A stretch of DNA of 64,000 bases from IMGVR_UViG_3300042308_001511:248001-312000; one strand, 5' to 3'; numbered from the stretch's first letter, positions 23,181 to 52,659 are shown. The notes: generated by a model from the letters alone, not told the origin. Made by a program: numbers and translations.

Positions 23181-24131
23181 ATGATGATGAACAGAACCAC
23201 AAAAGAAGAATTCACACAGGAACTATCCGACTGGGCTAAAAACTGGGAAAACGATATCCAAAAGTCTCTAAAAAGAAACATCACACTTTATTTAAACGGA
23301 ATCGGCAATATGGGTGAATACCTGGCATCACTAATTTCCGGAAAAAAAGGCACCGCATCCGGCGGCAGCGGATTCGACCTATTACACGGCACAACCGCAG
23401 ATGAATCCAAATTCGCATGTCTTGTACAAGCAAAAAAATGCACAAACAAAAATTGCGAAACAAAATTCCTTTTCTTTATGCCAACCGATAAATGTGAAAA
23501 ATGTGGCAGCAACTTAGATTATATGAGCGACTCACGTTGGGGAATCGATTCAGATGCTGGCATAAAATACCACGAAACATTAGAATACTACTGGATGCAA
23601 ATACTTGAACCAGTAAAATACCACTACTCTTGTAGAGAATTCGTATACAAATGCTTTAGAATAGACGCTAAAGATAAAAACTTCTACGAATACCTAAAAA
23701 ACCAAAACGATAACGGATCCAAAAATAACTGCAACTTCCAACCATACTCCGTAGACTTCTACAGATCATCACCTGTACTTGTTGCAGAATTCAAAATAGA
23801 AATCGGTATCGAAACTAAAGTAACACCAACATTCTTCGACCTAGATAACCAACAACCCGAAGAATTCGATACAAAAATATTAGAAATAACACACTGCAAA
23901 AGAACTCTCGATGTATTAGGACTTGATGAAACCAAAATATACCCATACACTCAGAATAAAAATAAATCTTGGAGCAAACAAGATGTACTAGAAACAGGTT
24001 TCACTAAAGAAAGAGATTACCTAATCAAAATTATACTCGAAAACCTAAACGGTAAAAAACTTTCACAAATAGTTCCAATCAAACCAAAATCATTAGGCAA
24101 AGAAAGAGGAACAACAAGGAGAAAACTCTAA
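23181..24131 (+). CDS. Putative PD-(D/E)xK endonuclease with Zn ribbon (restriction-enzyme-like)
   Basis: MGEYLAS..SGFDLL..DESK; CTNKNC..CEKC; convergent with a DNA MTase. Confidence 0.5.
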   Translation: MMMNRTTKEEFTQELSDWAKNWENDIQKSLKRNITLYLNGIGNMGEYLASLISGKKGTASGGSGFDLLHGTTADESKFACLVQAKKCTNKNCETKFLFFMPTDKCEKCGSNLDYMSDSRWGIDSDAGIKYHETLEYYWMQILEPVKYHYSCREFVYKCFRIDAKDKNFYEYLKNQNDNGSKNNCNFQPYSVDFYRSSPVLVAEFKIEIGIETKVTPTFFDLDNQQPEEFDTKILEITHCKRTLDVLGLDETKIYPYTQNKNKSWSKQDVLETGFTKERDYLIKIILENLNGKKLSQIVPIKPKSLGKERGTTRRKL

Positions 24132-24182: not shown

Positions 24183-25196
24183 TTATTCTAAATCCAATTC
24201 CGAATCCAATTCCGATTCCAAACCAGAATCCATCTTAATCAACTCCTTCTTACGCTTCTTACCCTTCTCCCTAACACTACCATCAAAGTAACCCTCCGGC
24301 AATTCAAAATTACTATCCTTTAACCTCTGTTCAACCAACCAAAAATACCTCTGATCTATATCAACTCCTAAATAGTCACGCCCTAACCTCTTAGCACCCA
24401 TTAATGAACTACCAGAACCCATAAAAAAATCTATCACCAAATCACCCTCTACCGAACTAGTCTTTATTATACGATCAACCAACATATCCGGCTTCTGTGT
24501 AGGATGAAACTTAGTACCCTTCTTAAAATAAAAAACAATATCGTCCCAAACATCCGTAAGTCCAAACTGCATATTGAATTTGTAAACCATATCATCATAC
24601 GCCGGTAACCTACCGTCAAATAAAATATCCAACTTAGTCCAATCCTCCCTCGTTGGCTGCATCAATGTCTTCTGTCTCAAACCGGCTATAGAACTCCACG
24701 TTCCACCTCCCCATGATGCCTTACCCAAATACTCATTTATCTCCTTTGGCGTAAGACCCTTCCTATCCTTCTCAACATTCAAAAGCTTCCTAATAACATC
24801 CGTAGAATCATAGTAAAATAAAAATGCACTCTCCGTAGTAGTTGGATACATCTTCAACTTAGAACTAACACGACCCGCCGCACTCTTCATACCCTTCCAA
24901 ATAACAACCTGCTGCTTAAACTTAAAACCATACCTCTCAAAAATAGGTATCAACATAGATAACTGATAAGGAAAACCAAAAACCCATACAGATCCAGAAT
25001 ATTTCGATATCCTCGAAACCTCACTAATCCATTTCTCACACCAATCTAAATACTCATCTATACTACGCCACTGCTTATCCCAATCCTCATTCACCACATT
25101 CATATACGGCGGATCTAATAAAAACAAATCACAGCTCCTGTCTGGTAACGTCGGCAAAAATTTGATTATGTCCGCGTTGTGAATCTCATTCCTCAT
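24183..25196 (-). CDS. Beta-class N6A/N4C DNA methyltransferase
   Basis: DLFLLDPPY before FHPTQKP and DFFMGSGS; helical insert in the TRD region. Confidence 0.9.
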   Translation of the reverse strand: MRNEIHNADIIKFLPTLPDRSCDLFLLDPPYMNVVNEDWDKQWRSIDEYLDWCEKWISEVSRISKYSGSVWVFGFPYQLSMLIPIFERYGFKFKQQVVIWKGMKSAAGRVSSKLKMYPTTTESAFLFYYDSTDVIRKLLNVEKDRKGLTPKEINEYLGKASWGGGTWSSIAGLRQKTLMQPTREDWTKLDILFDGRLPAYDDMVYKFNMQFGLTDVWDDIVFYFKKGTKFHPTQKPDMLVDRIIKTSSVEGDLVIDFFMGSGSSLMGAKRLGRDYLGVDIDQRYFWLVEQRLKDSNFELPEGYFDGSVREKGKKRKKELIKMDSGLESELDSELDLE

Positions 25197-26377: not shown

Positions 26378-26425
26378 ATGCGAAAACTACTAACAATCAT
26401 CCTAACAACACTTGCGTTATACTAA
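26378..26425 (+). pseudogene. Signal-peptide remnant MRKLLTIILTTLALY*
   Basis: LTIILTT identical to 25862; stop falls inside palindrome copy 1. Confidence 0.5.
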
Positions 26426-26710
26426 AAATACCACGTTTTTTAGTATGTTTTTTTCTGAACCGTGCAAGCACCTATAAATTGTTATTTCAAAAGCGGCTAT
26501 ACCGTAAATGCAGGTACATGCATCGGTCTCTAGGAGCCTTGCCCTTACTGGCTTTCAGAGGGTCTCATTTTTTTCACTGGTTTTCACTTTTTTTCCACAG
26601 GTTTTGAGCTTGTAGGCGTTGGTAAATAGTTACTAGGTCCCATACAAAAAAAACGTGGGATTTTTGGCACCTCAATTTTGGATATACTAAAAATCACGTG
26701 TTTTTTAGTG
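26419..26710. other. Candidate replication origin / skew-switch locus
   Basis: Non-coding, flanked by palindromes at 26419 and 26642/26684; hairpins 26508-26523 and 26542-26562; + strand changes from C/A-rich to G/T-rich here. Confidence 0.5.
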
Positions 26711-26750
26711 CTTTATTTTTTTGAATATATACTCTAAAATAAACTGAGTT

Positions 26751-27011
26751 ATGCAGATATTGAAGACATATGAGGGATTCCACGGGTATGGACCACAAAA
26801 GAAGAGGATATTGATTGAACAAAAGATGAAGTTTTTGCCTTTATTGGAGCAGCTACCAGATGAGGCAGATTTTTCTGTTGTTCATCAGAGTGATAAGTGG
26901 ACTGCGATTTCCTTTATCAAAATGGGTGGGAATCCGAGTGAGTTTTACTTAGATAAGGTTTTAGACATACTAAAGGAGAATGGCATTGACACCTCATCAA
27001 TCAGTGAGTGA
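26751..27011 (+). CDS. N-tag hypothetical protein
   Basis: MQILKTYEGF; GAATATATAC at 26723-26732. Confidence 0.6.
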   Translation: MQILKTYEGFHGYGPQKKRILIEQKMKFLPLLEQLPDEADFSVVHQSDKWTAISFIKMGGNPSEFYLDKVLDILKENGIDTSSISE

Positions 27012-27095
27012 TCATTTTTTTATAAGATACTAAAAATCACGTGTTTTTTTGTATATTTCAAATTTATATACAAAAAAACACGTGATTTTTAGCAT

Positions 27096-27791
27096 TTATT
27101 TGTTTTTGAAATATGTTAGGCCGAATGTGAATGTGTGTATTGTTTTCACTTTTTGTATTCCGTAGTAGTTATAGACATCTGCCGCAGTTATTGCTAAATT
27201 GGTTGCTATTCTATAGCTTATTTTAGTTGTTCCGTAAATAATAACATTTTCGCCACCATTTATAACGGGTTGATAATAATATTCGCTAGTAAATGTAAGT
27301 TTTTGTAGTTCTCTTACTATTTTTAGACGGAAAGAGTGTCTTATATATGATATGTCTTTGTTATTTATTCTTTGCCACAATAGGGCGTATGAGTAATTGA
27401 TTTTGAAACCTATAATTGTATCTCTTCTACCATATCCGATACCGATTAGGTTATCTAAATTCAGATCACGTGTTAGTGAGTAAGTTGTTTGTATTGTAGT
27501 AAATGCGCTATTATTTTTATTAGAGTATGGTATAATTAGTTTATTAGAAAATTCATTACTAATTAGTTTACTGGAGTATGAGATATCGTGATTTAGGTTG
27601 TTATTTATTGATATTTTGCCTAATTCGATATTTGTTGTGGAGTTTATACTCCCGTTGTAAGTTTTCTTAGAGTTATCGATATAATTGAATCCGAGTGTAT
27701 TATTGAGGTTATATTTCTGTGAAAAGATTATTATTGGTAGTAGTAATACCAATATTGTTATTTTGATTTTGTGTAATATACTAAAATTCAC
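27096..27791 (-). CDS. Outer-membrane beta-barrel protein (DUF481-like)
   Basis: Signal-like N-terminus, alternating beta strands, YYQP, ends TFTFGLTYFKNK; GTG start lies in palindrome copy 6. Confidence 0.6.
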   Translation of the reverse strand: MNFSILHKIKITILVLLLPIIIFSQKYNLNNTLGFNYIDNSKKTYNGSINSTTNIELGKISINNNLNHDISYSSKLISNEFSNKLIIPYSNKNNSAFTTIQTTYSLTRDLNLDNLIGIGYGRRDTIIGFKINYSYALLWQRINNKDISYIRHSFRLKIVRELQKLTFTSEYYYQPVINGGENVIIYGTTKISYRIATNLAITAADVYNYYGIQKVKTIHTFTFGLTYFKNK

Positions 27792-27805
27792 GTGATTTTT
27801 TGTAT

Positions 27806-28453
27806 TTAGAATGTTAGTTTTAGAGATTTGAGTATATGGTTATCATTAGATCCTCCTGTTGCAGCGCCTATACCTAAGTAGTAATTGTTATTATCGAAAG
27901 TAAAGTTTGTATATGAATGTTGCTCTGTAACGGGTTTTGTGTTACTGGTTGAGTAATATACCTTAGCGGTGCCGTTTGAGTGGTTGTAATCGAGCCAATA
28001 GTATGCATTTTGTCTAAATGAGATGGCTTGTGTTTCTGTGCCTTGGCTGGTATTATTTTTGTACCAGGTAACATTGTTATTGGTGAATGTAAGGAATGTT
28101 ATTGCGTTTATGGCGGATGTAATTCTGCCTACGCCACCGCCGGATACTCCGTTAGAGTTATTTGTTTGTGTCCATTGGATTGAGAATCCGTCGGCACCTG
28201 TTCCGTCGCTACATTCGAAGTTCCATTGTAGAGAGAAGTTTCGGTTGTATTTTATTTTGTTTGATCTGTATATGTTACCTACGTTTGCGTTGGTGTTATT
28301 TGTTATGTATATCCAGTTGTTGGATATTCCATAAGTAGATACGAGGTTTAGACCTTGCGTAGATATAAAGTTATCGTAGTTGAAACTGTCGTTTGTTTTA
28401 CTTTTCGGTAGTTTGGTTAGAGGTCCAGAGAAGGATGATACTTTATTGAGCAT
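27806..28453 (-). CDS. L-type (legume/ConA-like) lectin domain protein
   Basis: GADGFS, YWLDYN, YLGIGAATGG..DNHILKS; late motif 28474-28483. Confidence 0.75.
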   Translation of the reverse strand: MLNKVSSFSGPLTKLPKSKTNDSFNYDNFISTQGLNLVSTYGISNNWIYITNNTNANVGNIYRSNKIKYNRNFSLQWNFECSDGTGADGFSIQWTQTNNSNGVSGGGVGRITSAINAITFLTFTNNNVTWYKNNTSQGTETQAISFRQNAYYWLDYNHSNGTAKVYYSTSNTKPVTEQHSYTNFTFDNNNYYLGIGAATGGSNDNHILKSLKLTF

Positions 28454-28574
28454 TTTTATTTATATGGTTTCTATTATATATTATAATAGATTATACTAAA
28501 AAACACGTGAATTTTAGTATATTATTTTATAGAGGTGCCAAAGGGGATGTGATTTTTGGCACCTTTTGTATTGT

Positions 28575-28883
28575 TTAGATGTTATTGAAATTGGCAACGA
28601 CGTTATTTATGATTTTGTTTTTGATGTATTCTTTGCCTTGTTCGTCTGTGAATTTTTCAATTTCTGGGTTTGACATAGCATCTATGGTTGTTTGTAAGGC
28701 AGCGGTTGTCACTTCCATTACGGTCAGGTGGAATACTTTGGCGAAGTTATTTTTCAGGATCTCGCGGTTGGCTTCCATAGTTTCGGTTCCTTCGTCGAAT
28801 AGTTCTAAAAGGAATTCTACTTGTTCGTTTACTGGTTTAGCTTTGATTGTGTCGGCTTGTTCTTGTGTTAGGATAGTTTTCAT
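28575..28883 (-). CDS. Hypothetical protein
   Basis: TATATTTG at 28905-28912. Confidence 0.6.
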   Translation of the reverse strand: MKTILTQEQADTIKAKPVNEQVEFLLELFDEGTETMEANREILKNNFAKVFHLTVMEVTTAALQTTIDAMSNPEIEKFTDEQGKEYIKNKIINNVVANFNNI

Positions 28884-28924
28884 TGTTTAGGTTTTAGTTT
28901 TAGACAAATATACGTACGTAGTTC

Positions 28925-28984
28925 TTATAAAGAAAATAAGACTAATGTCACAATAACGATAACGATTACGATAATAATAGGCAT
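28925..28984 (-). CDS. 19-aa hydrophobic peptide MPIIIVIVIVIVTLVLFSL
   Basis: Short ORF with TATATTTG promoter at 29008-29015. Confidence 0.35.
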   Translation of the reverse strand: MPIIIVIVIVIVTLVLFSL

Positions 28985-29090
28985 GGCTTTATGTTTTTAG
29001 TGTTTCTCAAATATACTCATTCTTTGGGTACCAGGTACTAACAGGTGCTAAAAAAGACGTATTTTTTAGTATATTATTATTTTATAAGAT

Positions 29091-29215
29091 AGGTTGGAGT
29101 CTACCCTCTGCGTGCTGGTAGTGCACGAACCCTTTTCCCGGCTTTCCCAGTGAGTTAGTATGTGAAGTTATGGTCCCATCGTTTCTTTTGTTAAAGATAC
29201 GGAACTTTCCTGGAT
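29091..29215. ncRNA. Non-coding repeat copy 1 (structured RNA or DNA element)
   Basis: Four identical blocks (14, 22, 21, 11 nt) shared with 33328-33454; indels break frame. Confidence 0.55.
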
Positions 29216-29247
29216 GAATGGCTAAAAAAGACGTATTTTTTGGCATA

Positions 29248-30042
29248 TTATTTTGATTTGGGTCTGATAGAGATACCGAATAGTAGTTGTGTACTTTGTG
29301 TGTATACGCCGTATGCGAGTTTCTGGTTATCGATTTGTCCTATAGCATGCCTTAGATCTGTTCTGAAACTGATACGTTCTGAGATTGGTATTTTGATACC
29401 TATGTCTGCGAGTAGTCCCGCATCGACTCCAATGGTCTGCATTGGCTCTATATCGGATCGTATACCGTTGGTTGTGTTTGTATGATACTCTGATATAGGA
29501 AGAGAGAGAAAACCTCCCAGGTCGAGCGAGAGTGCCGTTTTGGTGCCATCTGTCTGTATTCCTATCATAAGTGGGATTGTGATATAGTTTAGCCTGGAGT
29601 ATCCTTCTGATACGACCCATGTTTTTGATTGGTATCCATAGTTTTCGGTTTGTGTCCAGAATTCGGAGTAGTAGGATCTTCCCTTGCTTTCTATGAAGAG
29701 TCCAGACTTCACGTTTATCCCTGGATTGACTGTACTTATCATTGCACCTGCGGAGTATCCCCAGATGTTGCCGAATTGTATTTGAAAGTCTGGTATGTTT
29801 CCGTAGAATTCTTCGTATCCGTTCTGGTCGTATCTGAACCAGTTTATGCTTGGTCCAATCTGTGGTGTTATTTCGACTGGGTACTTAGTACTTACTATGG
29901 TACCGAGAGCGGTTACAACACCTGCGGTTATGTAGCTGTTTACTGGATCCCAGGTTACTTTCTGTACTGGTGTATATGATTGTGCGATAAGTTTGGTGGA
30001 TAGCAGCACGATAAGTGCTAAAAAGTACGTGTTTTTTGGCAT
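29248..30042 (-). CDS. Outer-membrane beta-barrel, porin/PorT-like family
   Basis: Signal peptide; LNYITIPLMIG, DAGLLADIG, DLRHAIG, LLFGISI; ATG lies in palindrome copy 11. Confidence 0.7.
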   Translation of the reverse strand: MPKNTYFLALIVLLSTKLIAQSYTPVQKVTWDPVNSYITAGVVTALGTIVSTKYPVEITPQIGPSINWFRYDQNGYEEFYGNIPDFQIQFGNIWGYSAGAMISTVNPGINVKSGLFIESKGRSYYSEFWTQTENYGYQSKTWVVSEGYSRLNYITIPLMIGIQTDGTKTALSLDLGGFLSLPISEYHTNTTNGIRSDIEPMQTIGVDAGLLADIGIKIPISERISFRTDLRHAIGQIDNQKLAYGVYTQSTQLLFGISIRPKSK

Positions 30043-30044
30043 AT

Positions 30045-30812
30045 TTATTTTTCTAAGTTTTCTTTTACTCCAATTTGGTTCAGTCTATCAACACACATAT
30101 CATAATACATAGGATTGTTTTCAATTAGTATAAAATTCCTTTTTGTGTTTTTCGCGGCTAATCCTGTAGTCCCACAACCAGCACAATTATCTAAAATAAT
30201 ATTATCTTCATTACTATATGTTTTTATTAGATACTCACACAATTCTTGACTTTTTTGTGTTGGATGTATCGGTGGATGTGGTCTATCAAAACTTAAAATA
30301 CTTTTAGGATATTTTTTAGTATCACCCTTTCTATTTGCCGAAGGATTTTTATGACTATCAAATTTACCATAATTATTATTACCTAAATTACCATCTTTAT
30401 ATTTAGTACCCATACCATGTAAAGGTTCACCCTCAGTAAATTGTGGATTATATATTGGTAATTTTTTATAAAACACTATGATATCCTCATGGTTTCTTAA
30501 AGGCATTCTTTTAGCATTTAAAAATCCACTTCCCCTATTACCTTTATCCCAAATAAGATTATATCTATGTATTTTTTCATTAGATAACATCAACTTAGCA
30601 GTGAATTTATCCTGTCCAAATAAAATTATAGGTGAATTTTCTTTAGTTATCCTATTATATTGTTCCCAAAGTAATTCTAAATTTATGACTGAATCCCATT
30701 TGTTTTTGGTAACACCATAAGGTAAATCACATAATATCATATCAATATACTTATCAGGGATAGATTTCATTACTTCTAAACAATCCCCTAAATATGTTTT
30801 ATTTATTTCCAT
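30045..30812 (-). CDS. Beta-class DNA methyltransferase
   Basis: DMILCDLPYG, HPTQK, DNCAGCGTT. Confidence 0.9.
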   Translation of the reverse strand: MEINKTYLGDCLEVMKSIPDKYIDMILCDLPYGVTKNKWDSVINLELLWEQYNRITKENSPIILFGQDKFTAKLMLSNEKIHRYNLIWDKGNRGSGFLNAKRMPLRNHEDIIVFYKKLPIYNPQFTEGEPLHGMGTKYKDGNLGNNNYGKFDSHKNPSANRKGDTKKYPKSILSFDRPHPPIHPTQKSQELCEYLIKTYSNEDNIILDNCAGCGTTGLAAKNTKRNFILIENNPMYYDMCVDRLNQIGVKENLEK

Positions 30813-30830
30813 ATCCGTTTAATTTTGTTT

Positions 30831-31238
30831 TCATACGGTATTCCTTAGTACACCGTTTTTGTTTATTTTCCATTTATTCGAATGGTTTTTATGGTTCGTA
30901 TACATTATTGATTCTAAGCTTCTAAGGCCTTTGATACTCAGCATGTATTTTAGATCCGACTCTAAGCCATAACATTCGTCTTTATATGATATTCTTATCG
31001 TATCTGATAGGGTCCCGTTCATCTTATTGTAGAAATCATCATTGGATCTTATATCGATGTTTAAAACGTCTTCAGTGAAGTATATACTCCTTACAATGAA
31101 TGGTATCAGGGGCTCGTCGAATAGATAAAGGTTTGGAGGCCAATCGCGTTCGTTAGCAGGGATTCTGAGTTTCCCATTTATATCCAGATAGTTTAGAATC
31201 CTTTCAATCATTTCCAGCTTGATGTTCTTTGTCTTCAT
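30831..31238 (-). CDS. Hypothetical protein
   Basis: 135-aa ORF in operon. Confidence 0.55.
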   Translation of the reverse strand: MKTKNIKLEMIERILNYLDINGKLRIPANERDWPPNLYLFDEPLIPFIVRSIYFTEDVLNIDIRSNDDFYNKMNGTLSDTIRISYKDECYGLESDLKYMLSIKGLRSLESIMYTNHKNHSNKWKINKNGVLRNTV

Positions 31239-31242
31239 CTCA

Positions 31243-31509
31243 TTAATACTTAACCATTAAAAATGAGTGATCCCATTGATTGTAGTCTCCGCCTACAACA
31301 TCTTGAACTTGATATCCTTTCTTAATGTACTTATACATCTCGTCTGTGCCTCTTACATAAACTGTTGCTATGGGTTTAGCAGGAACTGAAAGTATAACTC
31401 CATTATCTACTCTAAATCGTTTGTCTTTTGACGCATCGGTTATTGTCATTGACATCATTACAAAAAATGCAAATCCTGCAATTAAGTATCCTAAGTTTTC
31501 TCTATTCAT
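31243..31509 (-). CDS. Membrane-anchored hypothetical protein
   Basis: Start at coupled ATG (MNRENLGYLIAGFAFFVMM). Confidence 0.6.
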   Translation of the reverse strand: MNRENLGYLIAGFAFFVMMSMTITDASKDKRFRVDNGVILSVPAKPIATVYVRGTDEMYKYIKKGYQVQDVVGGDYNQWDHSFLMVKY

Positions 31510-31757
31510 ATACCGATCTGGTTTAGGTTTGATTCTCTCAGCTTCTGTTTCAGTCTTTTCTCGTACTCCTCGATGGAGATTCGGAACTTGTTGCTCCATA
31601 CGAGTTCTCTGTACGGTGCCATTATGATGTCATCGTAGACGTATACGTTTTCGAAGATGATGTTTTTTCTGTTGACGGTCGGATCTGCCAGGCAGATAGC
31701 GTCTTTGATTATTTCGTGGTCGGGTTTCAAATCATTATTAATTTTGTATTTTTTCAT
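31506..31757 (-). CDS. C-tag hypothetical protein
   Basis: ends LRESNLNQIGI. Confidence 0.65.
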   Translation of the reverse strand: MKKYKINNDLKPDHEIIKDAICLADPTVNRKNIIFENVYVYDDIIMAPYRELVWSNKFRISIEEYEKRLKQKLRESNLNQIGI

Positions 31758-32031
31758 ATCTGTAAATATACGGAAAATAGTGAGAAGGTGCTAAACACCT
31801 CATCGTTTATTTAGACGATACATAACATAGACACTCAGACGCGACATATGTCTATGTACAACAAAGATTGATTGTTCTTCGATGGAGACATAGACATATG
31901 TCGAAAAGATTGATGTAAATCGACGCGTTCCTGTGATGCGTCTACTGTGCCGACGCTTTTTATTTTCACGGTTTCTGCACCAGTACCGGTATTTTTATTA
32001 TATTTGTAGAAACGAAGAAAAACGACGGACT

Positions 32032-32289
32032 ATGACAACTGATTTGAATAAGACCTTAGAGAAAGACGCAAACGGACGCTTGATCGACCTATACAACATC
32101 ATCCAGAACGAGGACATCACCAAAGCCGAAGGAGCCAACCTAAAGAGCTTATTCGAGACCGAGTTGAGAGTGATGCAGGAAGTGAGCGTACACCTACGCA
32201 GTGTACGTTTCGACCCATCGAGTGAAGAAGGAATGGAGCTGCAGCTTGGCCTTTGCCAAAAAGTGTTGAACGGCGAGTCATTGTCATAA
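32032..32289 (+). CDS. Hypothetical protein
   Basis: Start MTTDLNK behind TATATTTG at 31999-32006. Confidence 0.6.
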   Translation: MTTDLNKTLEKDANGRLIDLYNIIQNEDITKAEGANLKSLFETELRVMQEVSVHLRSVRFDPSSEEGMELQLGLCQKVLNGESLS

Positions 32290-32299
32290 ATCTACTAAA

Positions 32300-32818
32300 A
32301 TGAAATACTTCTCAGATTTCCAGACCGGAAAGACATACAACTACAAAACGCTCTCATTGGACGGCACCAAGACCGTTCGCGAGACTAACACCAAATACCT
32401 TTTCTCCTTCTACACAAGCAACGGAAACGAGATCGACCTTCACTTCTTCCCGAACGATAACTTCTCGGCACCTGAGGGATCCACGTTCGACGAGAAGAAA
32501 AAGAGGAAGTTGAACGACTCCAGGTGCAGGTACATACTGTGTGAGGTCGAGACAATAGTATACGACGTCGAAGGAAACGAGCACGGACGTGATACGAAGT
32601 TCGAGGTGTACGATAAGTCTACGGACAAGCAAACCTTCGCACGTGGAAAGAAAGCTCGTTACAACAAGGATTTCGCACCTTTCACGAGGTTCTTCAACAT
32701 CGAGCTGAAGGGCGGGAAGATGGTCTTGGCACCGGGCGGTGTCCACTACGGCGTGGTGCCAGGCACGTTGAAGCACGGAGTGGAGGTGAAGGCGGTTGAC
32801 TCATTAACAATAGTATAG
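32300..32818 (+). CDS. Hypothetical protein
   Basis: 172-aa ORF in island. Confidence 0.6.
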   Translation: MKYFSDFQTGKTYNYKTLSLDGTKTVRETNTKYLFSFYTSNGNEIDLHFFPNDNFSAPEGSTFDEKKKRKLNDSRCRYILCEVETIVYDVEGNEHGRDTKFEVYDKSTDKQTFARGKKARYNKDFAPFTRFFNIELKGGKMVLAPGGVHYGVVPGTLKHGVEVKAVDSLTIV

Positions 32819-32820
32819 AA

Positions 32821-33015
32821 ATGGACGGGTTGAGAATCATCGACAACAACACCGGGAACAAGTGGGTCATCAGATCAACGGGCAGAGGGCAGTTCCATCT
32901 GTCCAGGATCTATTCCAGCAAGAAGAACAAGAGAAGGCAGCAGTCGGAGCTGGTCTTCTCGGAATCTGAATGTCAAAAGTACATTAGTAATGGCAATTGG
33001 TCAAGCATCGTCTAA
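32821..33015 (+). CDS. Hypothetical protein
   Basis: 64-aa ORF in island. Confidence 0.5.
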   Translation: MDGLRIIDNNTGNKWVIRSTGRGQFHLSRIYSSKKNKRRQQSELVFSESECQKYISNGNWSSIV

Positions 33016-33058
33016 ATAGACGATAATACGTTTTATCGTTTATTTAGACGATTATCTT

Positions 33059-33256
33059 TCACGATATAGATATGTTTACGCACCATTTGACTCTGTGCTG
33101 CACGACACCGTTTTCGTTCAGGAAAGTCTCTCTGCGCAGGAAGCCATACAGATCCTTCTGGTCCACGATGACTCTTTCTCTGCCGTGCAGGCGCTGTAGC
33201 CTGAGAATCTCCTCATAGACCTCATCGATTGAGTTCGCTTCTATTTTTCGTGTCAT
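33059..33256 (-). CDS. Hypothetical protein
   Basis: Start MTRKIEA behind TATATTTG at 33272-33279. Confidence 0.5.
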   Translation of the reverse strand: MTRKIEANSIDEVYEEILRLQRLHGRERVIVDQKDLYGFLRRETFLNENGVVQHRVKWCVNISIS

Positions 33257-33327
33257 AGATATGTTTTTTGACAAATATAAGGAATATATTCTAATGAACA
33301 AAGGACGACTTTATTTTTTTATAAAGC

Positions 33328-33454
33328 AGGTTGGAGTCTACTCTTCCTGCACTGATGTTGTGCAACGCCCCTTTCCCGGCTTTCCCAGTGAGTCGATATG
33401 TCTTAGCTATGGTCCCATCGTTTCTTTTCATAAATATAAGGATCTTTCCTGGAT
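33328..33454. ncRNA. Non-coding repeat copy 2
   Basis: Homologous to 29091-29215; hairpin TGCAC-7nt-GTGCA corresponds to CGTGC-7nt-GCACG. Confidence 0.55.
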
Positions 33455-33515
33455 TAAACAAAGAAAGGTGCCAAAAATACACGTTTTTTGGCACCTTTCT
33501 ATAATCTGTATCAGA

Positions 33516-34805
33516 TTAGTTTTTTATGGCTTTCAGTGATATTGTTTGTCTGTCCTTTGTTATGTTCAGAAAATAAGTCCCTGGTTGCAGCATCTGTGTA
33601 TCGATTGAGATTGTGCCTCCGTCGAATACCTGGATTGTTTTCCCTTCGATGGTTGTAAATGTACCGTATGATCCAGGTGTCAAGCTAATCTCTATCCTAT
33701 CGTTGAAAGGGTTCGGCCAGAACAACTCTTTAAGTTGTTGTTCACGTAAAGATAAGCTAGATGAGTCTTTTAGTCCTGTATTGTCCCACAAACACTTCAC
33801 CGAGTCGAACTGGTAGACGTAGATAGTGTCTGTAGGCTGTACCGGTTTTGTGCCTTTGTTCTCCCATACGAGTGTTTTGATGTTGAACTGGTGGTTGTCC
33901 CAACAGGTTGTATCTGCAGGCCTGGTCGGTATTGCTCTTACAGAGTCCAGCCAGAAATATCCTGCGTACGGGTGGTACATCTGACATACGGGAGTATTAT
34001 CGTTACAATCAGATAGGAACTTACCAGATACTATAATACTATCGAGGTGAACGATTCCTGCGACCTGTGCTGCTGCGTAGTTACAGATCTTATACTGAGT
34101 GTTGTCGTAGCTGATATAGTAGCCTGAGCAGTCTGTAAAGCCGAGTGCTACGTAGTTGGTGATTGGTCCTGGTTCTGTACCTGGTACAATCATTATAGGA
34201 ACACCGGTTGGTTTGTATTCTTTGTTATTGGTTCCAACAACGGAACAACCGTTAGCGTCGGTGAATACGACGTATAGTTTAGGATTGTATAGGTTCATAA
34301 AGCAACCACCTTGGTTTGGACCGTAGTATTGGGTGAATGTGTTGTCCCAGTTCTTTGTGTATACTTTATCAATCATAGCATAGTTAGCTTTATCGACTGA
34401 AAAGTAAATACAGGTTTGTTGGTTTTGAGGGTTCTGTGGATCTGGCATCTGTATAACATTGAAGGAAGTGACCTTCAGTGAGTCACAGTCTTTAGTGACA
34501 GCGATAGAGATGTTTATTAGTGTGTCCAACGAGAATTTGGCTAAGCCGTCATCTTTCTTCTTACCGAGTACCCAGTAGGTGCCTGGTACGAGTTCGCCTT
34601 TTGTTTTAAAGTTTGTGGCCAGTTCGGATCCCTGTATTGCAGCGTCTACGACTCTATAGATTGACCACTTTTTAATGTTTGTTCCTGTGGTGTCGACTGA
34701 TACGGCACCATCATTGAAGTTTGGTCCAGTAGCGTTTGTGACCTTTACTTGTGAGTTTGCTAGGAATGCTAGCATAAATGAGATTGTAGCTATTAGTTTT
34801 TTCAT
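33516..34805 (-). CDS. Secreted protein with T9SS type A C-terminal sorting domain
   Basis: Signal peptide; C-term FWPNPFNDRIEI..TIEGKTI..IDTQMLQPGTYFLNI..LKAIKN. Confidence 0.8.
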   Translation of the reverse strand: MKKLIATISFMLAFLANSQVKVTNATGPNFNDGAVSVDTTGTNIKKWSIYRVVDAAIQGSELATNFKTKGELVPGTYWVLGKKKDDGLAKFSLDTLINISIAVTKDCDSLKVTSFNVIQMPDPQNPQNQQTCIYFSVDKANYAMIDKVYTKNWDNTFTQYYGPNQGGCFMNLYNPKLYVVFTDANGCSVVGTNNKEYKPTGVPIMIVPGTEPGPITNYVALGFTDCSGYYISYDNTQYKICNYAAAQVAGIVHLDSIIVSGKFLSDCNDNTPVCQMYHPYAGYFWLDSVRAIPTRPADTTCWDNHQFNIKTLVWENKGTKPVQPTDTIYVYQFDSVKCLWDNTGLKDSSSLSLREQQLKELFWPNPFNDRIEISLTPGSYGTFTTIEGKTIQVFDGGTISIDTQMLQPGTYFLNITKDRQTISLKAIKN

Positions 34806-34850
34806 ATTATTTTTTATACGAAAATAAATAAAAGATTTGATATGGTGTAA

Positions 34851-34882
34851 AAAAAAACCGTTCTGTTTTGAACGGGTTTTTT
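34851..34882. terminator. Intrinsic terminator
   Basis: AAAAAACCGTTC-TGTTTT-GAACGGGTTTTTT. Confidence 0.65.
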
Positions 34883-34895
34883 ATAATGTGAAAAA

Positions 34896-35201
34896 CTATG
34901 GTCTGTTTTGGTTCTGTTGTTGCTGAGGTTGTGGACAGATGACGTTCATAGTGGCGCCGTAGACCTTTAGGCCCAACGGAGTGTCCGCACCGTGAAGTTG
35001 GTGCCACTGACCCTCTGTTTTCATACCAGGGTTCACCGCCTCACCCTGTTGTTGTGCTCTGTACTGGTCACAAAGACCGTTAGGGCCATATACCAAACCC
35101 TTAATACCCTGTTGTTGCTGTTGTTGAGTCATATTCTGTGAGAATACAAATCCTGTAAACAAAAACGACACTATAAAGGCAATCACTTTACTTTTCTCCA
35201 T
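34896..35201 (-). CDS. Secreted Gln-rich protein
   Basis: MEKSKVIAFIVSFLFTGFVFSQ signal; polyQ tracts; two Cys. Confidence 0.6.
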   Translation of the reverse strand: MEKSKVIAFIVSFLFTGFVFSQNMTQQQQQQGIKGLVYGPNGLCDQYRAQQQGEAVNPGMKTEGQWHQLHGADTPLGLKVYGATMNVICPQPQQQQNQNRP

Positions 35202-35839
35202 CTTTTTATTATTTTTTTTATACGGCACCGAAACCAGCACCAGTTATATATTCCATTCCTAAAATCTCCCAAAAGGTACCAAAATCTCCACCAAACCCTC
35301 GGCCAGAACCTCCAATCATTCTTCCTATCCTCAACCAAACGCTCTGACCTCATAACGTTGGCCCACTCATCGTAGTCTAAATAAGCCAACTCTGCGTCAC
35401 CTATATCCCAAGACCCAGGTACCGACCAATCCTTTCCCATGTGACCTGAAAGTGCAAGAACACATACCTCCTCTAACAATGGTGAAACACCTATGTCTAA
35501 TCGCTTACTAGCCCTACGAAAACGTCCAACATGCCAAGCATTGACATCTATCAGTGCCACGTAGAACTCGTAATGTACAAACGAAGAGTCGGGTATGCCA
35601 TATCTACCCAGATCCAAAAGACGATCTTGTAACTGAAAGTAAGTAAGTTCGAACACAACACTACCATCACCAGAAAGACGATAACCCAAGTCCCTATCGA
35701 AACCTGTTTCCCAGTCATGCGTGAACCAGTCGTACATCGCCTGCACCGGATCTGAATACTCCTCTACCCAATAACCCTGTGTAGGACTAAGAACACCATT
35801 TACCTTCCTAAGTGGTAATAGAACCAATAACCAGCACAT
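35183..35839 (-). CDS. Hypothetical protein
   Basis: Start at coupled ATG (TGATG overlap); Trp/Arg-rich C-terminus. Confidence 0.55.
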   Translation of the reverse strand: MCWLLVLLPLRKVNGVLSPTQGYWVEEYSDPVQAMYDWFTHDWETGFDRDLGYRLSGDGSVVFELTYFQLQDRLLDLGRYGIPDSSFVHYEFYVALIDVNAWHVGRFRRASKRLDIGVSPLLEEVCVLALSGHMGKDWSVPGSWDIGDAELAYLDYDEWANVMRSERLVEDRKNDWRFWPRVWWRFWYLLGDFRNGIYNWCWFRCRIKKIIKRWRKVK

Positions 35840-36195
35840 CAATCGTAACAAATATGACCCTCCAAAGTACCAACACCGTAGACGTGTCCTTGTACGTAAA
35901 CCGTGTAGGTACCTGGTGGAATCTTAAATACACCATGTTCGAAAACTTGACTATAGTAATCACCAAACATAGTTATACCTGAAATCTTAACTCCAGTCGC
36001 CTGACCATCACCATACTTCATAAACCTGACAGATATCCGTCCAGTCTTAGTCGTGAACGTACCGTTAGTCTGAGTTATGTTGGGTGTCGATTGCCAAGAA
36101 GACCTACGTCCCTGTGTGAAAATTGAACTGCACATCTCACATGAGAAACACCAAACAGAAAATAACAAAAAAACCAATGAAACTAATATCCTCAT
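35839..36195 (-). CDS. Secreted hypothetical protein
   Basis: MRILVSLVFLLFSVWCFSC signal peptide. Confidence 0.55.
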   Translation of the reverse strand: MRILVSLVFLLFSVWCFSCEMCSSIFTQGRRSSWQSTPNITQTNGTFTTKTGRISVRFMKYGDGQATGVKISGITMFGDYYSQVFEHGVFKIPPGTYTVYVQGHVYGVGTLEGHICYD

Positions 36196-36205
36196 AATAT
36201 GATAT

Positions 36206-36574
36206 TTACTTACCCAGTATTTCTTTGTCAGTTGCTGACATAGATGTAACTACCATCGATAAGCCGGTGGCCATTACTGAGGCCCATTCAGGAAGTTTGA
36301 ATATGACACAGATTATGCCTAATATGATGTAAATTAATATACCTATCAGTATTCCTTTACCTAAACTTTTCCAGGTCGGTGGAACCTCATCTTCGTCTGC
36401 TACTGTAAGTGCCATTATGCCGGAACACACCGTTGCTATTGTTAGTAATAGATAGTATCCACCTGACCAGGTTCCACCGACCCACCAGTTTAGTAACAGG
36501 TAGTAAAGTGTACCTGTAGCGAGTGTGGTTCCGAGTGCTTTGATGATTCTTGAGATAATTAATGGTAAGTTCAT
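36206..36574 (-). CDS. 4-TM membrane protein
   Basis: Four hydrophobic segments. Confidence 0.6.
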   Translation of the reverse strand: MNLPLIISRIIKALGTTLATGTLYYLLLNWWVGGTWSGGYYLLLTIATVCSGIMALTVADEDEVPPTWKSLGKGILIGILIYIILGIICVIFKLPEWASVMATGLSMVVTSMSATDKEILGK

Positions 36575-36662
36575 AATAAAAAATATTTTTGTTTTTATAC
36601 AAAAATAAATAAAAGATTTGATATGGTGCTAAAAAATAATATATACAAAAAAGAAGATATTT

Positions 36663-37544
36663 ATGAAGTACATAAAGACTTACGAAGTGCTGAAGGAGGC
36701 CAAGCTTCCCAGAAGGAGGTTCATACTACTGTCAGGCCCCAGCGCCTCTGGTAAGTCAACACTGGCAAAGAACCTAGGTGCCACTCACTGGTACGATAAG
36801 ATGTCCCAGGCGGTACTGATTGGCACCGACGACTTTATGAATAGAAAGGCCTTCGGGGTTATGAAAAGTCTTTGTAAGGCTGCGGGAATGCCTTTACTGG
36901 CCGCTATGATGAAGGACTGGCCGCACGTATTCGACCAATACAAAAAAGACTTCACAAAGTGGCGCAAGACGGCATCAACCGAGGAGCAGTCAATCTTCGA
37001 CGACCTACATAAGAGGTTCCCTATCGATAAGGCGAAGGACAACGCTCCACACTTCCACCAAGACGGAAGGATCACAGGGATGGCCTGGTGTGCTGCACTT
37101 CTACCTAAGGAGTGTAAGACCATATTGTTCGACGACATATCTGTTGGTATAAAGAAGTACTTCGATGTTGATGAGTGGATCCTGTTCACACCATTTGACT
37201 GGTTGCTTAAGAACATAACCGACAGGAACTCAGATAAGGATAAGAGTGTTCATATAGACGTGAACTCGGAGGGTACCGCTATATACCAGTACTGCCAATG
37301 GTGGCAGGCGTCTGCTGAGGCGGATCTCGACAACAAGATGTACACGGCGGATTCTGTTAGGACGATGCTGTCTGCGGCAGGTCATAATGATCCAGATGAG
37401 GTTCTTTCGCTACTGGGTGTTAAGGGTCTTGATAACGGGTTCTATCTTACGACCAGGGACTGGATCGACGCGGGTTCGAGGATTGTGAACACCAGGGATG
37501 TTTCTACCGGTAGGGCCGGGGATTTGCCGGGTGGCTTAAAATAA
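36663..37544 (+). CDS. N-tag P-loop kinase
   Basis: MKYIKTYEVLKE; FILLSGPSASGKST; ILFDD; TAATATATAC at 36637-36646. Confidence 0.75.
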   Translation: MKYIKTYEVLKEAKLPRRRFILLSGPSASGKSTLAKNLGATHWYDKMSQAVLIGTDDFMNRKAFGVMKSLCKAAGMPLLAAMMKDWPHVFDQYKKDFTKWRKTASTEEQSIFDDLHKRFPIDKAKDNAPHFHQDGRITGMAWCAALLPKECKTILFDDISVGIKKYFDVDEWILFTPFDWLLKNITDRNSDKDKSVHIDVNSEGTAIYQYCQWWQASAEADLDNKMYTADSVRTMLSAAGHNDPDEVLSLLGVKGLDNGFYLTTRDWIDAGSRIVNTRDVSTGRAGDLPGGLK

Positions 37545-37561
37545 CATGGACTTTATGAAAC

Positions 37562-37767
37562 TTACATTCCCAATTCCTTAAGTTTATCTTCTCTGAGCTC
37601 TTCTACGGTTCTGAAGTTTTTCCGATCCAGATAAGACCATCTATCACTATCATTTTTGACTAAAATCAAATCCGGAGACATTCCATAGTCGTTTGCATCG
37701 TACCACTTGCCGACGTGACTGACAGGCGTTCTAATATTGATTGATTACTTACACAAATGACCTTCAT
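37562..37767 (-). pseudogene. Frameshifted C-tag small beta-barrel paralog
   Basis: MKVICVSNQ.. in frame 0; -1 frame ..HVGKWYDAND..LREDKLKELGM*. Confidence 0.6.
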
Positions 37768-37879
37768 ACTATTGTTATTCTCATAGGAACAAATATAGCG
37801 ATTAAAAAGAAAGGTGCCAAAAAATACGAGTTTTTTGGCAACTCATCATACTGGGTTCCGGTAAATAATATATACCCTT

Positions 37880-52200: not shown

Positions 52201-52659
52201 TTATGGATTTTTATCGGTGCACATCTCTTTTTTAATCGCTTCTTCCACCTTGGAATACCAGGTGGCAGTGGAGGTGGTTGGTGGACTCACCTCTCGTTTG
52301 AGTGCGTCTTCTACCTTATAATAGTATTGGAATTTCGTTGGATCAGGTGTACCCACCTCTCGTTTGAGTGCGTCTTCTACCAGCACCTTCGTTATTGCTT
52401 GTATTTCCTCGTATTTCAAATGGAAATTGGATTCGAAAAACTCCCAGTATTTATAATAGTGTGTCCAGAATTTTTCATTTTTACAATCCTGGTAGAATAT
52501 CCATTGACCATCTTTATGATATATGAATTCTAATCCATCTTCATTATATACATTACAATTGATAATCTCAATTCCTGACGTAATTTCGCAGAACAGGTCT
52601 ATGACAGTGTTTTGGTTCCCCATCAGTAAATCAATCTTTATGTCTCTTACTTCTTTCAT
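52201..52659 (-). CDS. Hypothetical protein with tag-like N-terminus and 22-aa repeats
   Basis: Coupled start MKEVRDIKIDLL; KVEDALKREV repeats. Confidence 0.6.
   Translation of the reverse strand: MKEVRDIKIDLLMGNQNTVIDLFCEITSGIEIINCNVYNEDGLEFIYHKDGQWIFYQDCKNEKFWTHYYKYWEFFESNFHLKYEEIQAITKVLVEDALKREVGTPDPTKFQYYYKVEDALKREVSPPTTSTATWYSKVEEAIKKEMCTDKNP
52222..52381. repeat. 66-bp-period coding tandem repeat x3
   Basis: CACCTCTCGTTTGAGTGCGTCTTCTACC at 52288 and 52354; degenerate copy at 52222. Confidence 0.85.

What the first reader, a model, noticed from the sequence alone, without database searches (positions are those of the whole stretch)
29091..33454. Two 125-bp non-coding repeats with a covarying hairpin, sharing three ordered motifs with the skew-switch locus
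Seen: 29091-29215 and 33328-33454 share identical blocks AGGTTGGAGTCTAC, TTTCCCGGCTTTCCCAGTGAGT, TATGGTCCCATCGTTTCTTTT and CTTTCCTGGAT. They differ by non-triplet indels, so they are not coding, and keep a 5-bp/7-nt-loop hairpin with different sequence (CGTGC/GCACG vs TGCAC/GTGCA). The 26.5-kb locus has the same order of elements: TGCA hairpin (26508-26523), CCCTT..YGGCTTTC (26542-26556), GGTCCCAT (26636-26643), and all three are followed by a 28-bp palindrome. On the - strand both repeats contain a TAnnTTTA promoter-like box. Inference: either an undescribed structured ncRNA (possibly a replication primer RNA) or secondary origin/priming modules.
Basis: partly seen in the sequence, partly recalled or inferred. 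Interest (0 to 1): 0.75.

Follow-up and report, generated by a model that had tools for sequence, protein, structure and literature searches.

The report
Paralogous small RNA genes in jumbo phage

Summary
The repeats at 29091-29215 and 33328-33454 are the only two copies in the 344-kb phage genome. At least 35 related copies occur in freshwater metagenome contigs, and one 12.6-kb contig holds at least five. The 5-bp hairpin, plus one outer pair, covaries at all 6 pairs and is 99.7-100% paired. It includes U.G pairs that would be C.A on the + strand, so the RNA is read from the window's minus strand. Each copy has a Bacteroidota-type promoter (TTTG-N20-TATCTTTA). A 3-7-codon ORF whose last or second-last codon is proline (MGP*, MRPP*, MDPPQ*...) sits where the neighbouring protein genes have their start codon. 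It is followed by a short hairpin, an invariant purine tract GGGAAAAGGG, the covarying hairpin, the block GRGUAGAC, and an AU-rich or terminator hairpin. There is no match in Rfam 15, GenBank phages, IMG/VR, GTDB genomes or the searched literature. The 26.5-kb locus is not homologous by covariance model (7 bits, E=7) and shares only three short ordered motifs. The "28-bp palindromes" are bidirectional terminators, not part of the RNA. An origin or primer role has no support. Most likely this is an independently transcribed, trans-acting small RNA family of an accessory region. Transcription and function remain unverified.

The parts
29086..29189 (-). Small RNA gene copy 1 (type A): transcribed part from about the predicted start to the end of the 3' conserved block
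   Evidence: Covariance-model match of 114 bits, E about 1e-21; aligned with more than 30 homologues
33323..33428 (-). Small RNA gene copy 2 (type B)
   Evidence: Covariance-model match of 122 bits, E about 1e-23
29192..29199 (-). -7 promoter box TATCTTTA of copy 1; the -33-like TTAG lies at 29222-29225
   Evidence: The box is present in nearly all copies, with TTTG/TTAG 20-22 nt upstream. The same motif class, CCKTATNTTTR, precedes the neighbouring protein genes
33431..33438 (-). -7 promoter box TATATTTA of copy 2; the -33 TTTG lies at 33459-33462
29168..29179 (-). Mini-ORF ATG GGA CCA TAA (MGP*), 12 nt after the -7 box
   Evidence: A short ORF with Pro as last or second-last residue occurs in about 33 of 39 copies, with in-frame CCA insertions, synonymous CCA to CCG changes and one independently placed ATG
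33407..33418 (-). Mini-ORF ATG GGA CCA TAG (MGP*)
29138..29150 (-). Hairpin H1, CUGG-GAAAG-CCGG, followed by the invariant purine tract GGGAAAAGGG (29128-29137)
   Evidence: Invariant in most copies. Compensatory variants are CUAG/CUGG (L091:8286) and ACCA-GGGA-UGGU (L048:142-250). It is replaced by another hairpin in L091:5188
33376..33388 (-). Hairpin H1 of copy 2
29111..29127 (-). Hairpin H2 (5 bp, 7-nt loop ending in CA), plus one outer pair
   Evidence: All 6 pairs covary and 100% of cells are paired in 24 distinct sequences, with 0/500 shuffles reaching the score. Seven U.G pairs exist only on the minus strand
33348..33364 (-). Hairpin H2 of copy 2
29091..29106 (-). 3' conserved block GGGUAGACUCCAACCU, with possible hairpin H3' AGRGUAG / loop ACUCCAAC / CURYYUU
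   Evidence: 95.5-98.8% paired, but the covariation is not significant. The loop is replaced by ACCGGACC in some relatives
33328..33343 (-). 3' conserved block of copy 2
33309..33326 (-). AU-rich terminal hairpin CUUUAU-A6-AUAAAG after copy 2
   Evidence: A hairpin is kept at this place with different sequences: UUGGGC/GCCCAA in L034, CUUUCUAU/AUAGAAAG in L035, and GCGCUU/AAGCGC plus U5 in L048
29045..29075 (.). Palindrome downstream of copy 1 (bidirectional terminator type)
29220..29246 (.). Palindrome upstream of the copy 1 promoter; it ends the upstream gene 29248-30042(-)
33462..33500 (.). Palindrome upstream of the copy 2 promoter. It is a terminator of gene 33516-34805(-), and its U-rich tail supplies the -33 TTTG
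   Evidence: Flagged as terminator-like with 16 pairs and a T-rich tail
26508..26643 (-). Doubtful degenerate relative: ATGGGACC .. GAAAGCC.GUAAGGGC .. hairpin AUGCA/UGCAU. It has no promoter box and no GUAGAC block
   Evidence: Ordered motifs are unique to three loci, but the model score is 7.1 bits, E=7, and the locus does not align

Best explanation
The two repeats are paralogous copies of a phage-encoded small RNA gene of about 105-125 nt on the window's minus strand. Shown: the RNA-level hairpin, the conserved promoter-type and terminator-type signals, the multi-copy family in related phages, and the absence from all known RNA families. Inferred: host RNA polymerase starts at a Bacteroidota-type -33/-7 promoter about 7 nt after TATCTTTA. 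The transcript opens with an A-rich, near-leaderless 3-7-codon ORF with proline as its last or second-last codon, placed exactly where the neighbouring early genes have their start codon. A ribosome probably loads and pauses there, stabilising or timing the RNA. There follow a short GNRA-like-capped hairpin (H1), an exposed invariant purine tract GGGAAAAGGG, the covarying hairpin H2, the block GRGUAGAC (possibly a third hairpin with a swappable 8-nt loop), and a terminal hairpin or terminator. My best guess is that the RNA acts in trans. Its invariant, weakly structured segments would bind a conserved partner (a protein or an RNA) of the host or the phage during early infection, as a regulator or decoy. 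H1 and H2 would serve as sequence-free scaffolds. Roughly 0.85 that it is a real, independently transcribed structured RNA gene; roughly 0.4 that it acts in trans as described.
For: Hairpin H2: 6 of 6 pairs covary, 100% of cells are paired, and 0/500 shuffles reach the score; slid controls give 21-41% pairing. With 30 distinct sequences, pairing is 99.7% and 9 of 10 pairs show double changes. Strand: 7 U.G pairs in H2, an invariant U.G in H1 and 2-3 G.U pairs in H3' exist only on the minus strand. The promoter box is nearly invariant, with TTTG 20 nt upstream, and belongs to the class used by adjacent protein genes. Terminator: L048:142-250 ends in a canonical GC hairpin plus U5, and other copies keep a hairpin with different sequences. 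Independent unit: flanking genes differ between loci. Copy 2 is followed by a separate full promoter for the next gene. In L091 copies lie between convergent genes or antisense to their neighbours, and two copies face each other across one terminator. Not coding: the core is read in different frames in the two copies (sequence). The RNA is weakly folded overall (z -0.75 and -1.15), which fits exposed binding segments. Mini-ORF. Bacteroidota host: a T9SS sorting domain and A-rich initiation regions without Shine-Dalgarno sequences. No known family.
Against: Transcription is not shown. The one true metatranscriptome whose index held words of the RNA (X23) gave no laid contig, and the other runs are probably DNA. 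No target was found: the phage genome has only chance-level complementarity to the invariant blocks, and the host is unknown. The AU-rich terminal hairpin is not a canonical terminator in most copies. One copy (L091:5188) has no promoter of its own and lies directly behind a 184-aa gene, and three copies lack the mini-ORF. So neither the promoter nor the mini-ORF is obligatory. H3' has no significant covariation.
Confidence: 0.55

Rival explanations
1. Cis-acting leader element. In this reading the RNA works only on its own transcript. It could act as a processive antiterminator like HK022 put, letting polymerase read through the many palindromic terminators. It could also be a mini-ORF-controlled attenuator or riboswitch that governs read-through into the downstream genes.
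For: The element sits directly after a promoter. Two or more copies per genome recall putL/putR and nutL/nutR. The region is full of terminators. In most loci the next gene lies on the same strand. The 3' strand CUGCUUU can pair either with AGRGUAG or within the AU hairpin, which gives alternative structures. The Pro-stop mini-ORF resembles a stalling leader peptide.
Against: Downstream genes have full promoters of their own. Copy 2 is followed by a single 66-aa gene and then by opposite-strand genes. In L091 several copies point into convergent genes or into another copy. Downstream genes are unrelated between loci. No Rfam riboswitch or leader matches.
Confidence: 0.15
2. Mobile regulatory cassette. 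In this reading the unit of terminator, promoter and short transcript is kept mainly as a recombination substrate that shuffles accessory genes, like the PeSL cassettes of T4-type phages. The RNA itself would have no function.
For: The copies flank variable gene sets 0.8-4.5 kb long in a hypervariable region. Orthologous copies differ by block replacement of about 14 nt in the 3' loop, which suggests gene conversion. Palindrome-plus-promoter modules are repeated throughout the region.
Against: Recombination alone does not explain five or more fully compensated stem versions of H2 inside otherwise invariant flanks. It also does not explain about 40 invariant nucleotides across lineages whose leaders have diverged.
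Confidence: 0.1
3. RNA decoy for a host or phage RNA-binding protein. One candidate is a Cas13b (type VI-B) crRNA-repeat mimic, that is an RNA anti-CRISPR. The other is a Y-RNA-like partner of the phage's own Ro60 (TROVE) protein.
For: The core begins with ACUGGGAAAGCC and type A copies have AAGGGU. This resembles the Flavobacterium columnare VI-B repeat GTTGGGAAAGCCC...GAAGGGTATCTACAAC (PMC5395568). The alignment score beats all 2000 shuffles of the repeat for type A, and p is 0.004 for type B. The region carries anti-restriction-type orphan methylases. The phage encodes a TROVE protein, and phage Ro60 proteins bind two Y-like RNAs (PMC12135203).
Against: The repeat was recalled after the motif was seen, so the test is post hoc. 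The RNA cannot form the repeat's CCCUU/AAGGG stem. Its GUUG/CAAC ends are not kept: the 5' end is ACUG, and the 3' block varies as CAAC, CAGC, CCGC, CUGC or CGGAC. No similar repeat was found in 401 sampled Bacteroidota genomes, though that sample did not return the F. columnare repeat either, so this is weak negative evidence. For Y RNA there is no stem between the 5' and 3' ends and no conserved CGAA motif. The genes lie 225 kb from the Ro60 gene, which has its own GC-rich candidate RNA directly upstream.
Confidence: 0.08
4. DNA-level element: a secondary replication origin or priming site, or a single-stranded-DNA hairpin signal.
For: The hairpin would also form in single-stranded DNA, and there is a local GC-skew inflection near 26 kb.
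Against: The wobble pattern is strand-specific and of RNA type. The promoter and terminators frame the element. The global skew extremes lie elsewhere. Copy number ranges from 2 to at least 5, with varied placement among accessory genes in relatives. No replication genes lie beside it.
Confidence: 0.03
5. Decayed or very small protein-coding gene. Here the conservation would reflect a peptide, either beyond the mini-ORF or read through its stop codon.
For: Copy 1 is open in one frame from the ATG to a far stop apart from the single TAA. L041:505-604 has a longer open frame through the core.
Against: The two window copies put the invariant core in different frames through non-triplet indels. 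The stop codons are TAA, TAG and TGA, so no single recoding fits. Compensatory stem changes ignore codon positions. Database searches with the overlapping ORF find only the same locus.
Confidence: 0.02

Closest known systems
Independently transcribed phage and prophage small RNAs (for example lambda OOP, P1/P7 C4, P4 CI, DicF, and the anti-sRNAs AgvB/AsxR)
   Same: About 100 nt long, with its own promoter and terminator. It is encoded in an accessory or early region and combines conserved single-stranded segments with hairpins.
   Different: No sequence or structure match to any of them, or to any Rfam 15 family. No antisense or complementary target was found in the phage. It is multi-copy and starts with a translated-looking mini-ORF.
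HK022 putL/putR and lambda nutL/nutR RNA elements
   Same: Two paralogous copies per genome lie just downstream of promoters. Stems covary and unpaired bases are conserved, in a terminator-rich early region.
   Different: Downstream genes have their own promoters. Some copies face convergent genes or each other. There is no similarity of sequence or fold, and no test of antitermination was possible.
PeSL (promoter-early stem-loop) mobile regulatory cassettes of T4-type phages
   Same: Repeated modules of stem-loop terminator plus early promoter flank orphan genes in a hyperplastic region. This applies to the 28-bp palindromes with the TTTG/TAnnTTTG promoters, and to the framing of the RNA genes.
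   Different: PeSLs contain no 75-nt conserved RNA core with a covarying internal hairpin. That comparison rests on my knowledge of the literature; it was not tested here.
Lambda bar minigenes, and 5' stalled-ribosome stabilisers such as the ermC leader
   Same: A 3-7-codon ORF lies at the very 5' end of a short transcript, and its last or second-last sense codon is proline, which is known to slow termination.
   Different: bar minigenes are two codons long and have no conserved structured RNA behind them. Translation of the mini-ORF here is only inferred.
Y RNAs / YrlA-YrlB and phage Yrl1-Yrl2 (Ro60 partners)
   Same: Similar size range, two paralogues, and a phage that encodes a TROVE protein. 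The row of small hairpins loosely recalls a tRNA-like layout.
   Different: No terminal stem, no CGAA motif, no T-arm or D-arm consensus, and not adjacent to the Ro60 gene.

Membership tests
Any Rfam 15 family | Covariance-model score at or above the gathering threshold | tested here: not met
   No hits at gathering score over the whole window. The best permissive hits on the element score 13-15 bits with E of 2-5.
tRNA / tmRNA | Cloverleaf with anticodon loop and T-loop consensus (ARAGORN) | tested here: not met
   No genes found in the window. The H2 loop lacks U33 and a purine at position 37 (sequence).
Y RNA / YrlA | Long stem formed by the 5' and 3' ends that carries the Ro60 site | tested here: not met
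   No such stem appears in the consensus or the single folds.
Y RNA / YrlA | GNCGAA(N)G / CGAA motif and a T-arm-like stem-loop (PMC4201824, PMC12135203) | tested here: not met
   The leader has ACGAUG only in some copies and ACAAUG in others; no CGAA is conserved.
Y RNA / YrlA | Encoded next to the Ro60/TROVE gene | tested here: not met
   The TROVE gene lies at genome 48.6-50.1 kb and the RNA genes at 277 and 281 kb.
RNA anti-CRISPR (solitary repeat mimic), type VI-B | Near-full-length similarity to a host CRISPR repeat, including its stem and its GUUG...CAAC ends | tested here: not met
   Only TGGGAAAGCC and AAGGGT are shared with the F. columnare repeat. The stem cannot form and the ends vary. 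The true host's repeats are unknown.
HK022 put-type processive antiterminator | Acts in cis on downstream terminators of a long operon | not testable with these tools
   The context argues against it: the next genes have their own promoters, and some copies lie in convergent arrangements.
Protein-coding gene | A conserved reading frame across paralogues | tested here: not met
   The core is in different frames in the two copies and the indels are not multiples of three.
Bacteroidota sigma-A type promoter | -33 TTTG and -7 TAnnTTTG about 19-21 nt apart | tested here: met
   TTTG-N20-TATCTTTA occurs in most copies. The last base is A instead of G, and TATATTTG is found in L041/L097. Activity was not tested.
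CRISPR array in the phage | Regularly spaced direct repeats | tested here: not met
   There is no array in the 344-kb genome; the only regular repeats are tandem repeats at genome positions about 26-30 kb and 201.5 kb that are not CRISPR-like, the former with 9-nt-multiple spacings typical of coding repeats.

The most novel reading that the evidence does not exclude
This is a new class of phage small RNA that couples a translated Pro-stop minigene to a conserved RNA scaffold, made early by the host polymerase from several dispersed copies. It would act as a decoy or regulator of a host function, for instance an RNA-guided or RNA-sensing defence or part of the translation machinery. The swappable 8-nt loop (ACUCCAAC versus ACCGGACC) and the variable copy number would tune its specificity.
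Probability: 0.2. Interest if true: 0.8.

Novelty: new variant of a known kind. Interest (0 to 1): 0.55.

Why it matters
Hardly any non-coding RNAs are known from phages of Bacteroidota or from jumbo phages of lakes. This family is abundant in freshwater metagenomes: about 20 DNA runs from a dozen studies hold 26-99% of the sampled words of this window stretch. It is well defined by covariation and comes with a clear promoter and an unusual conserved mini-ORF, so it can be tested directly. If it proves to be a host-takeover or anti-defence RNA, it would add an RNA-based mechanism in a phylum whose translation and transcription signals differ from those of model bacteria. If it has no function of its own, it still marks the modular cassettes that shuffle accessory genes in these phages.

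Tried and rejected
1. Rfam at gathering and at permissive thresholds gave nothing.
2. Four IMG/VR pattern scans gave only chance matches.
3. The GTDB genome scan gave 18 matches, all by chance. A model search of two Bacteroidota genomes and a loose pattern search of 401 genomes found nothing.
4. GenBank phages gave no match, by megablast or by blastn.
5. A literature search for the invariant blocks found no paper.
6. RNA evidence is inconclusive: the metatranscriptome X23 laid no contig, and X24-X26 look like DNA.
7. A search for targets of the invariant blocks in the phage genome found only chance-level 9-10-mers.
8. A direct-repeat or target-site-duplication reading of the core's flanks was not significant.
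9. A small hairpin GAG/CUC in the 3' block is refuted by the variants GACCGG.
10. A closing helix CUGG/CCA(A/G) has inconsistent variants.
11. A Shine-Dalgarno or anti-Shine-Dalgarno role is unlikely: the phage does not use Shine-Dalgarno sequences and has no S21 gene.
12. No CsrA or RRM protein is encoded in the phage.
13. Using the spurious ORF over the RNA as a protein query found only two near-identical entries.
14. The genome has no CRISPR array.

Full report
**What the window is.** The window is bases 248001-312000 of a 344,083-bp IMG/VR virus record that is estimated 91% complete and has 36.6% G+C. The host is very probably a member of Bacteroidota. ORF 33516-34805(-) carries a type IX secretion C-terminal sorting domain. 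Across 341 long ORFs, the regions before the start codon are A-rich and G-poor and lack Shine-Dalgarno motifs (11 of 341, against 32 in a control window). About 20 lake and freshwater DNA runs hold 26-99% of the sampled words of the stretch 28500-34000.

**Checking the observation.** The two repeats are as described. The 22-mer block occurs twice, against 0 expected. BLAST and a covariance model both find exactly two copies in the genome. The hairpins CGTGC/GCACG and TGCAC/GTGCA differ by three fully compensated pairs.

**Homologues.**
- One scan of metagenome contigs, using two blocks as the pattern, returned 27 loci, 24 of them real homologues and all from freshwater samples.
- A covariance model (R1) then found further copies that the pattern had missed: L044:3203, L050:46, L041:505 and L048:142.
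- Contigs fetched through neighbouring proteins added more. L091, at 12.6 kb, holds copies at 1400, 5188, 8286 and 9320 on the + strand and at 9471 on the - strand.
- Two or more copies within a few kb is the rule: the window, L035, L041, L044, L046, L048, L050 and L091 all show it.
- Nothing was found in IMG/VR, in one genome per GTDB species, in GenBank phages, in Rfam 15 or in the searchable literature.

**Strand and structure.**
- In an alignment of 26 copies, read as the window's minus strand, the hairpin H2 and one outer pair covary at all six pairs. Every cell is paired, and no shuffle out of 500 reaches the score. Slid controls give 21-41% pairing.
- With 32 copies, pairing is 99.7% and 9 of 10 pairs show double changes.
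- Seven distinct sequences have U.G at the loop-closing pair. On the + strand these would be C.A.
- Hairpin H1 (CUGG-GAAAG-CCGG) has an invariant U.G. It is compensated in divergent copies (CUAG/CUGG; ACCA-GGGA-UGGU) and is replaced by an unrelated hairpin in L091:5188.
- A third helix, AGRGUAG/CURYYUU around an 8-nt loop, is 95-99% paired. It rests on one-sided changes only, so it is unproven. Its loop is ACUCCAAC in most copies and ACCGGACC, or similar, in L091 and L097.
- The smaller GAG/CUC hairpin is refuted by those same variants.
- Overall folding energy is unremarkable (z -0.75 and -1.15 on the minus strand). Much of the invariant sequence, notably GGGAAAAGGG, is therefore probably exposed.

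**Transcription signals.**
- On the minus strand every complete copy but a few has TATCTTTA (TATATTTA in copy 2, TATATTTG in L041/L097), with TTTG or TTAG 20-22 nt upstream. This is the Bacteroidota -33/-7 promoter type.
- The extended form CCKTATNTTTR is rare in this genome, with 21 sites, and 8 of the 12 minus-strand sites lie at 277-306 kb. It precedes the neighbouring protein genes.
Many relatives have a different sequence there.
- Downstream, a hairpin is always present, but its sequence differs: GCUUUAU-A6-7-AUAAAGC in most copies, UUGGGC/GCCCAA in L034, CUUUCUAU/AUAGAAAG in L035, and a canonical GCGCUU/AAGCGC plus U5 in L048:142-250.

**The palindromes.** The 28-bp palindromes GCYAAAAA..ACG..TTTTTRGC occur ten times in the genome. 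All lie in window 26424-37820, and they are frequent in the related contigs. The terminator scan picks up two of them: 33500-33462, which lies just upstream of the copy 2 promoter on the RNA strand, and 37840-37815. They separate transcription units and are not part of the RNA. Many homologues, the L030 type for example, have no palindrome upstream.

**The mini-ORF.** In most copies an ATG lies twelve nucleotides after the -7 box. The neighbouring gene 33059-33256(-) has its start codon at almost the same distance, 15 nt. The ATG is followed by two to six codons and a stop: MGP*, MRPP*, MRAP*, MKPP*, MSPP*, MDPPQ*, MNMDPPQ* and MKEP*. Several points suggest translation matters:
- The length changes are in frame (insertions of CCA).
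- CCA to CCG changes are synonymous.
- L050:46-139 has its ATG at a different place, yet its ORF still ends in CCA-TAG.

Even so, the mini-ORF is missing where the promoter sits next to the core (L041/L097), and also in L091:5188, which directly follows a 184-aa gene. The core can therefore function, or at least persist, without it. The core itself is not coding, because the two window copies put it in different frames.

**Context.** The flanking genes differ from locus to locus. They are accessory-type genes: orphan DNA methylases, a lectin-like protein, a T9SS-sorted protein, BspA-type LRR, NUDIX and HSP20. Copy 2 is followed by a complete separate promoter for the next gene. In L091 the copies lie between convergent genes or antisense to their neighbours, and two copies converge on one terminator. 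This fits a stand-alone RNA gene better than a leader of particular genes.

**The 26.5-kb locus.** On the minus strand it has ATGGGACC, GAAAGCC.GUAAGGGC and a 5-bp hairpin in the same order. That ordered pattern is unique to the three loci, though the test is partly circular. It has no promoter box and no GUAGAC block, and its spacings are very different. It scores 7.1 bits (E=7) with filters off and does not align. At best it is a decayed copy. The local skew change there reflects gene orientation. The genome-wide extremes of cumulative skew are near 60 and 240 kb. Nothing supports an origin or a primer.

**Function.** I found no target in the phage and no conserved neighbouring protein. Two leads were followed.
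- The first is a resemblance of the start of the core to the type VI-B CRISPR repeat of Flavobacterium columnare (PMC5395568). It is better than shuffles, but it was found post hoc and is structurally inconsistent, and the supposed repeat ends vary within the family.
- The second is that the phage encodes a Ro60/TROVE protein, and phage Ro60 proteins bind two Y-like RNAs (PMC12135203). These RNAs, however, lack the terminal stem and the CGAA motif and lie 225 kb away. The Ro60 gene also has its own GC-rich structured upstream region, with a 5'/3' stem and a CGAA.

I therefore commit only to the following: an independently transcribed, probably early, trans-acting small RNA. Its exposed invariant segments would bind a conserved partner, and the Pro-stop mini-ORF would plausibly hold a ribosome at the 5' end. 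A cis-acting (put-like or attenuator) role and a pure recombination-cassette role remain open.

**Transcription evidence.** One small freshwater metatranscriptome holds a third of the sampled words of copy 2, but no contig of it could be laid. The other "RNA" runs behave like DNA. Expression is thus unproven.

Noticed in passing
window 26424-37820 (for example 26424, 26689, 27032, 27072, 29050, 29224, 30020, 33473, 37819): Ten copies of a 24-30-bp palindrome GCYAAAAA..ACG..TTTTTRGC occur only in this 11-kb stretch of the 344-kb genome. They sit between genes, often next to TTTG/TAnnTTTG promoters, and look like bidirectional terminators forming PeSL-like regulatory cassettes. They are also frequent in the related metagenome contigs.
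   Followed up: partly
L100 6609-8123(-) = genome 48608-50122; upstream L100 8130-8320(-): The phage encodes a Ro60/TROVE protein of 504 aa. The 190 nt upstream are unusually GC-rich, fold with a 5'/3' stem and contain a CGAA motif. This is a candidate Y-RNA-like partner that Rfam does not detect.
   Followed up: partly
window 28925-28984 (-): A 19-residue, extremely hydrophobic mini-ORF (MPIIIVIVIVIVTLVLFSL*) with its own TATATTTG box lies just downstream of copy 1 and its terminator. It could be a small membrane peptide or a type-I-toxin-like gene. It is not conserved beside the RNA in other loci.
   Followed up: no
L027, L033, L035, L039, L044, L046 (about 20-90 nt downstream of the RNA): A second conserved element, CTTCTCCCACARGATGACCTGGACATCCAGAAAGGAGA, with a CUGGA..UCCAG hairpin, follows the RNA gene in several related contigs. 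It is absent from this window. Whether it is coding or RNA is undecided.
   Followed up: partly
window 27017-27105: A nearly perfect inverted repeat of about 80 nt, made of two palindrome units facing each other, lies at the convergent junction of the + and - gene blocks. It gives spurious microRNA-precursor hits in Rfam.
   Followed up: no
window 24183-25196 (-) and 30045-30812 (-): Two orphan N6/N4 DNA methyltransferase genes lie in the same accessory region, with a weak MamI-like restriction-enzyme hit at 23181-24131. This suggests an anti-restriction or defence-related island.
   Followed up: no
window 27806-28453 (-), 33516-34805 (-); L049 2290-3447: The region carries host-surface-type accessory genes: a legume-lectin-like protein, a protein with a T9SS C-terminal sorting domain and, in a related contig, a BspA-type leucine-rich-repeat protein.
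   Followed up: no
genome 26-30 kb and 201.5 kb (outside the window): There are dense tandem repeats of 18-54 nt units, the 26-30-kb set at 9-nt-multiple spacings as in coding repeats, found while looking for CRISPR arrays. A 180-200-aa gene family (genome 201.3-201.8 kb; window 52201-52749) occurs as tandem arrays of up to six copies next to the RNA genes in related contigs (L030, L044, L051).
   Followed up: no
L091 5188-5314 (+): One family member has no promoter or mini-ORF and lies immediately after the stop codon of a 184-aa gene. Its first hairpin is replaced by an unrelated one. The core can therefore also exist as a 3' UTR element.
   Followed up: partly
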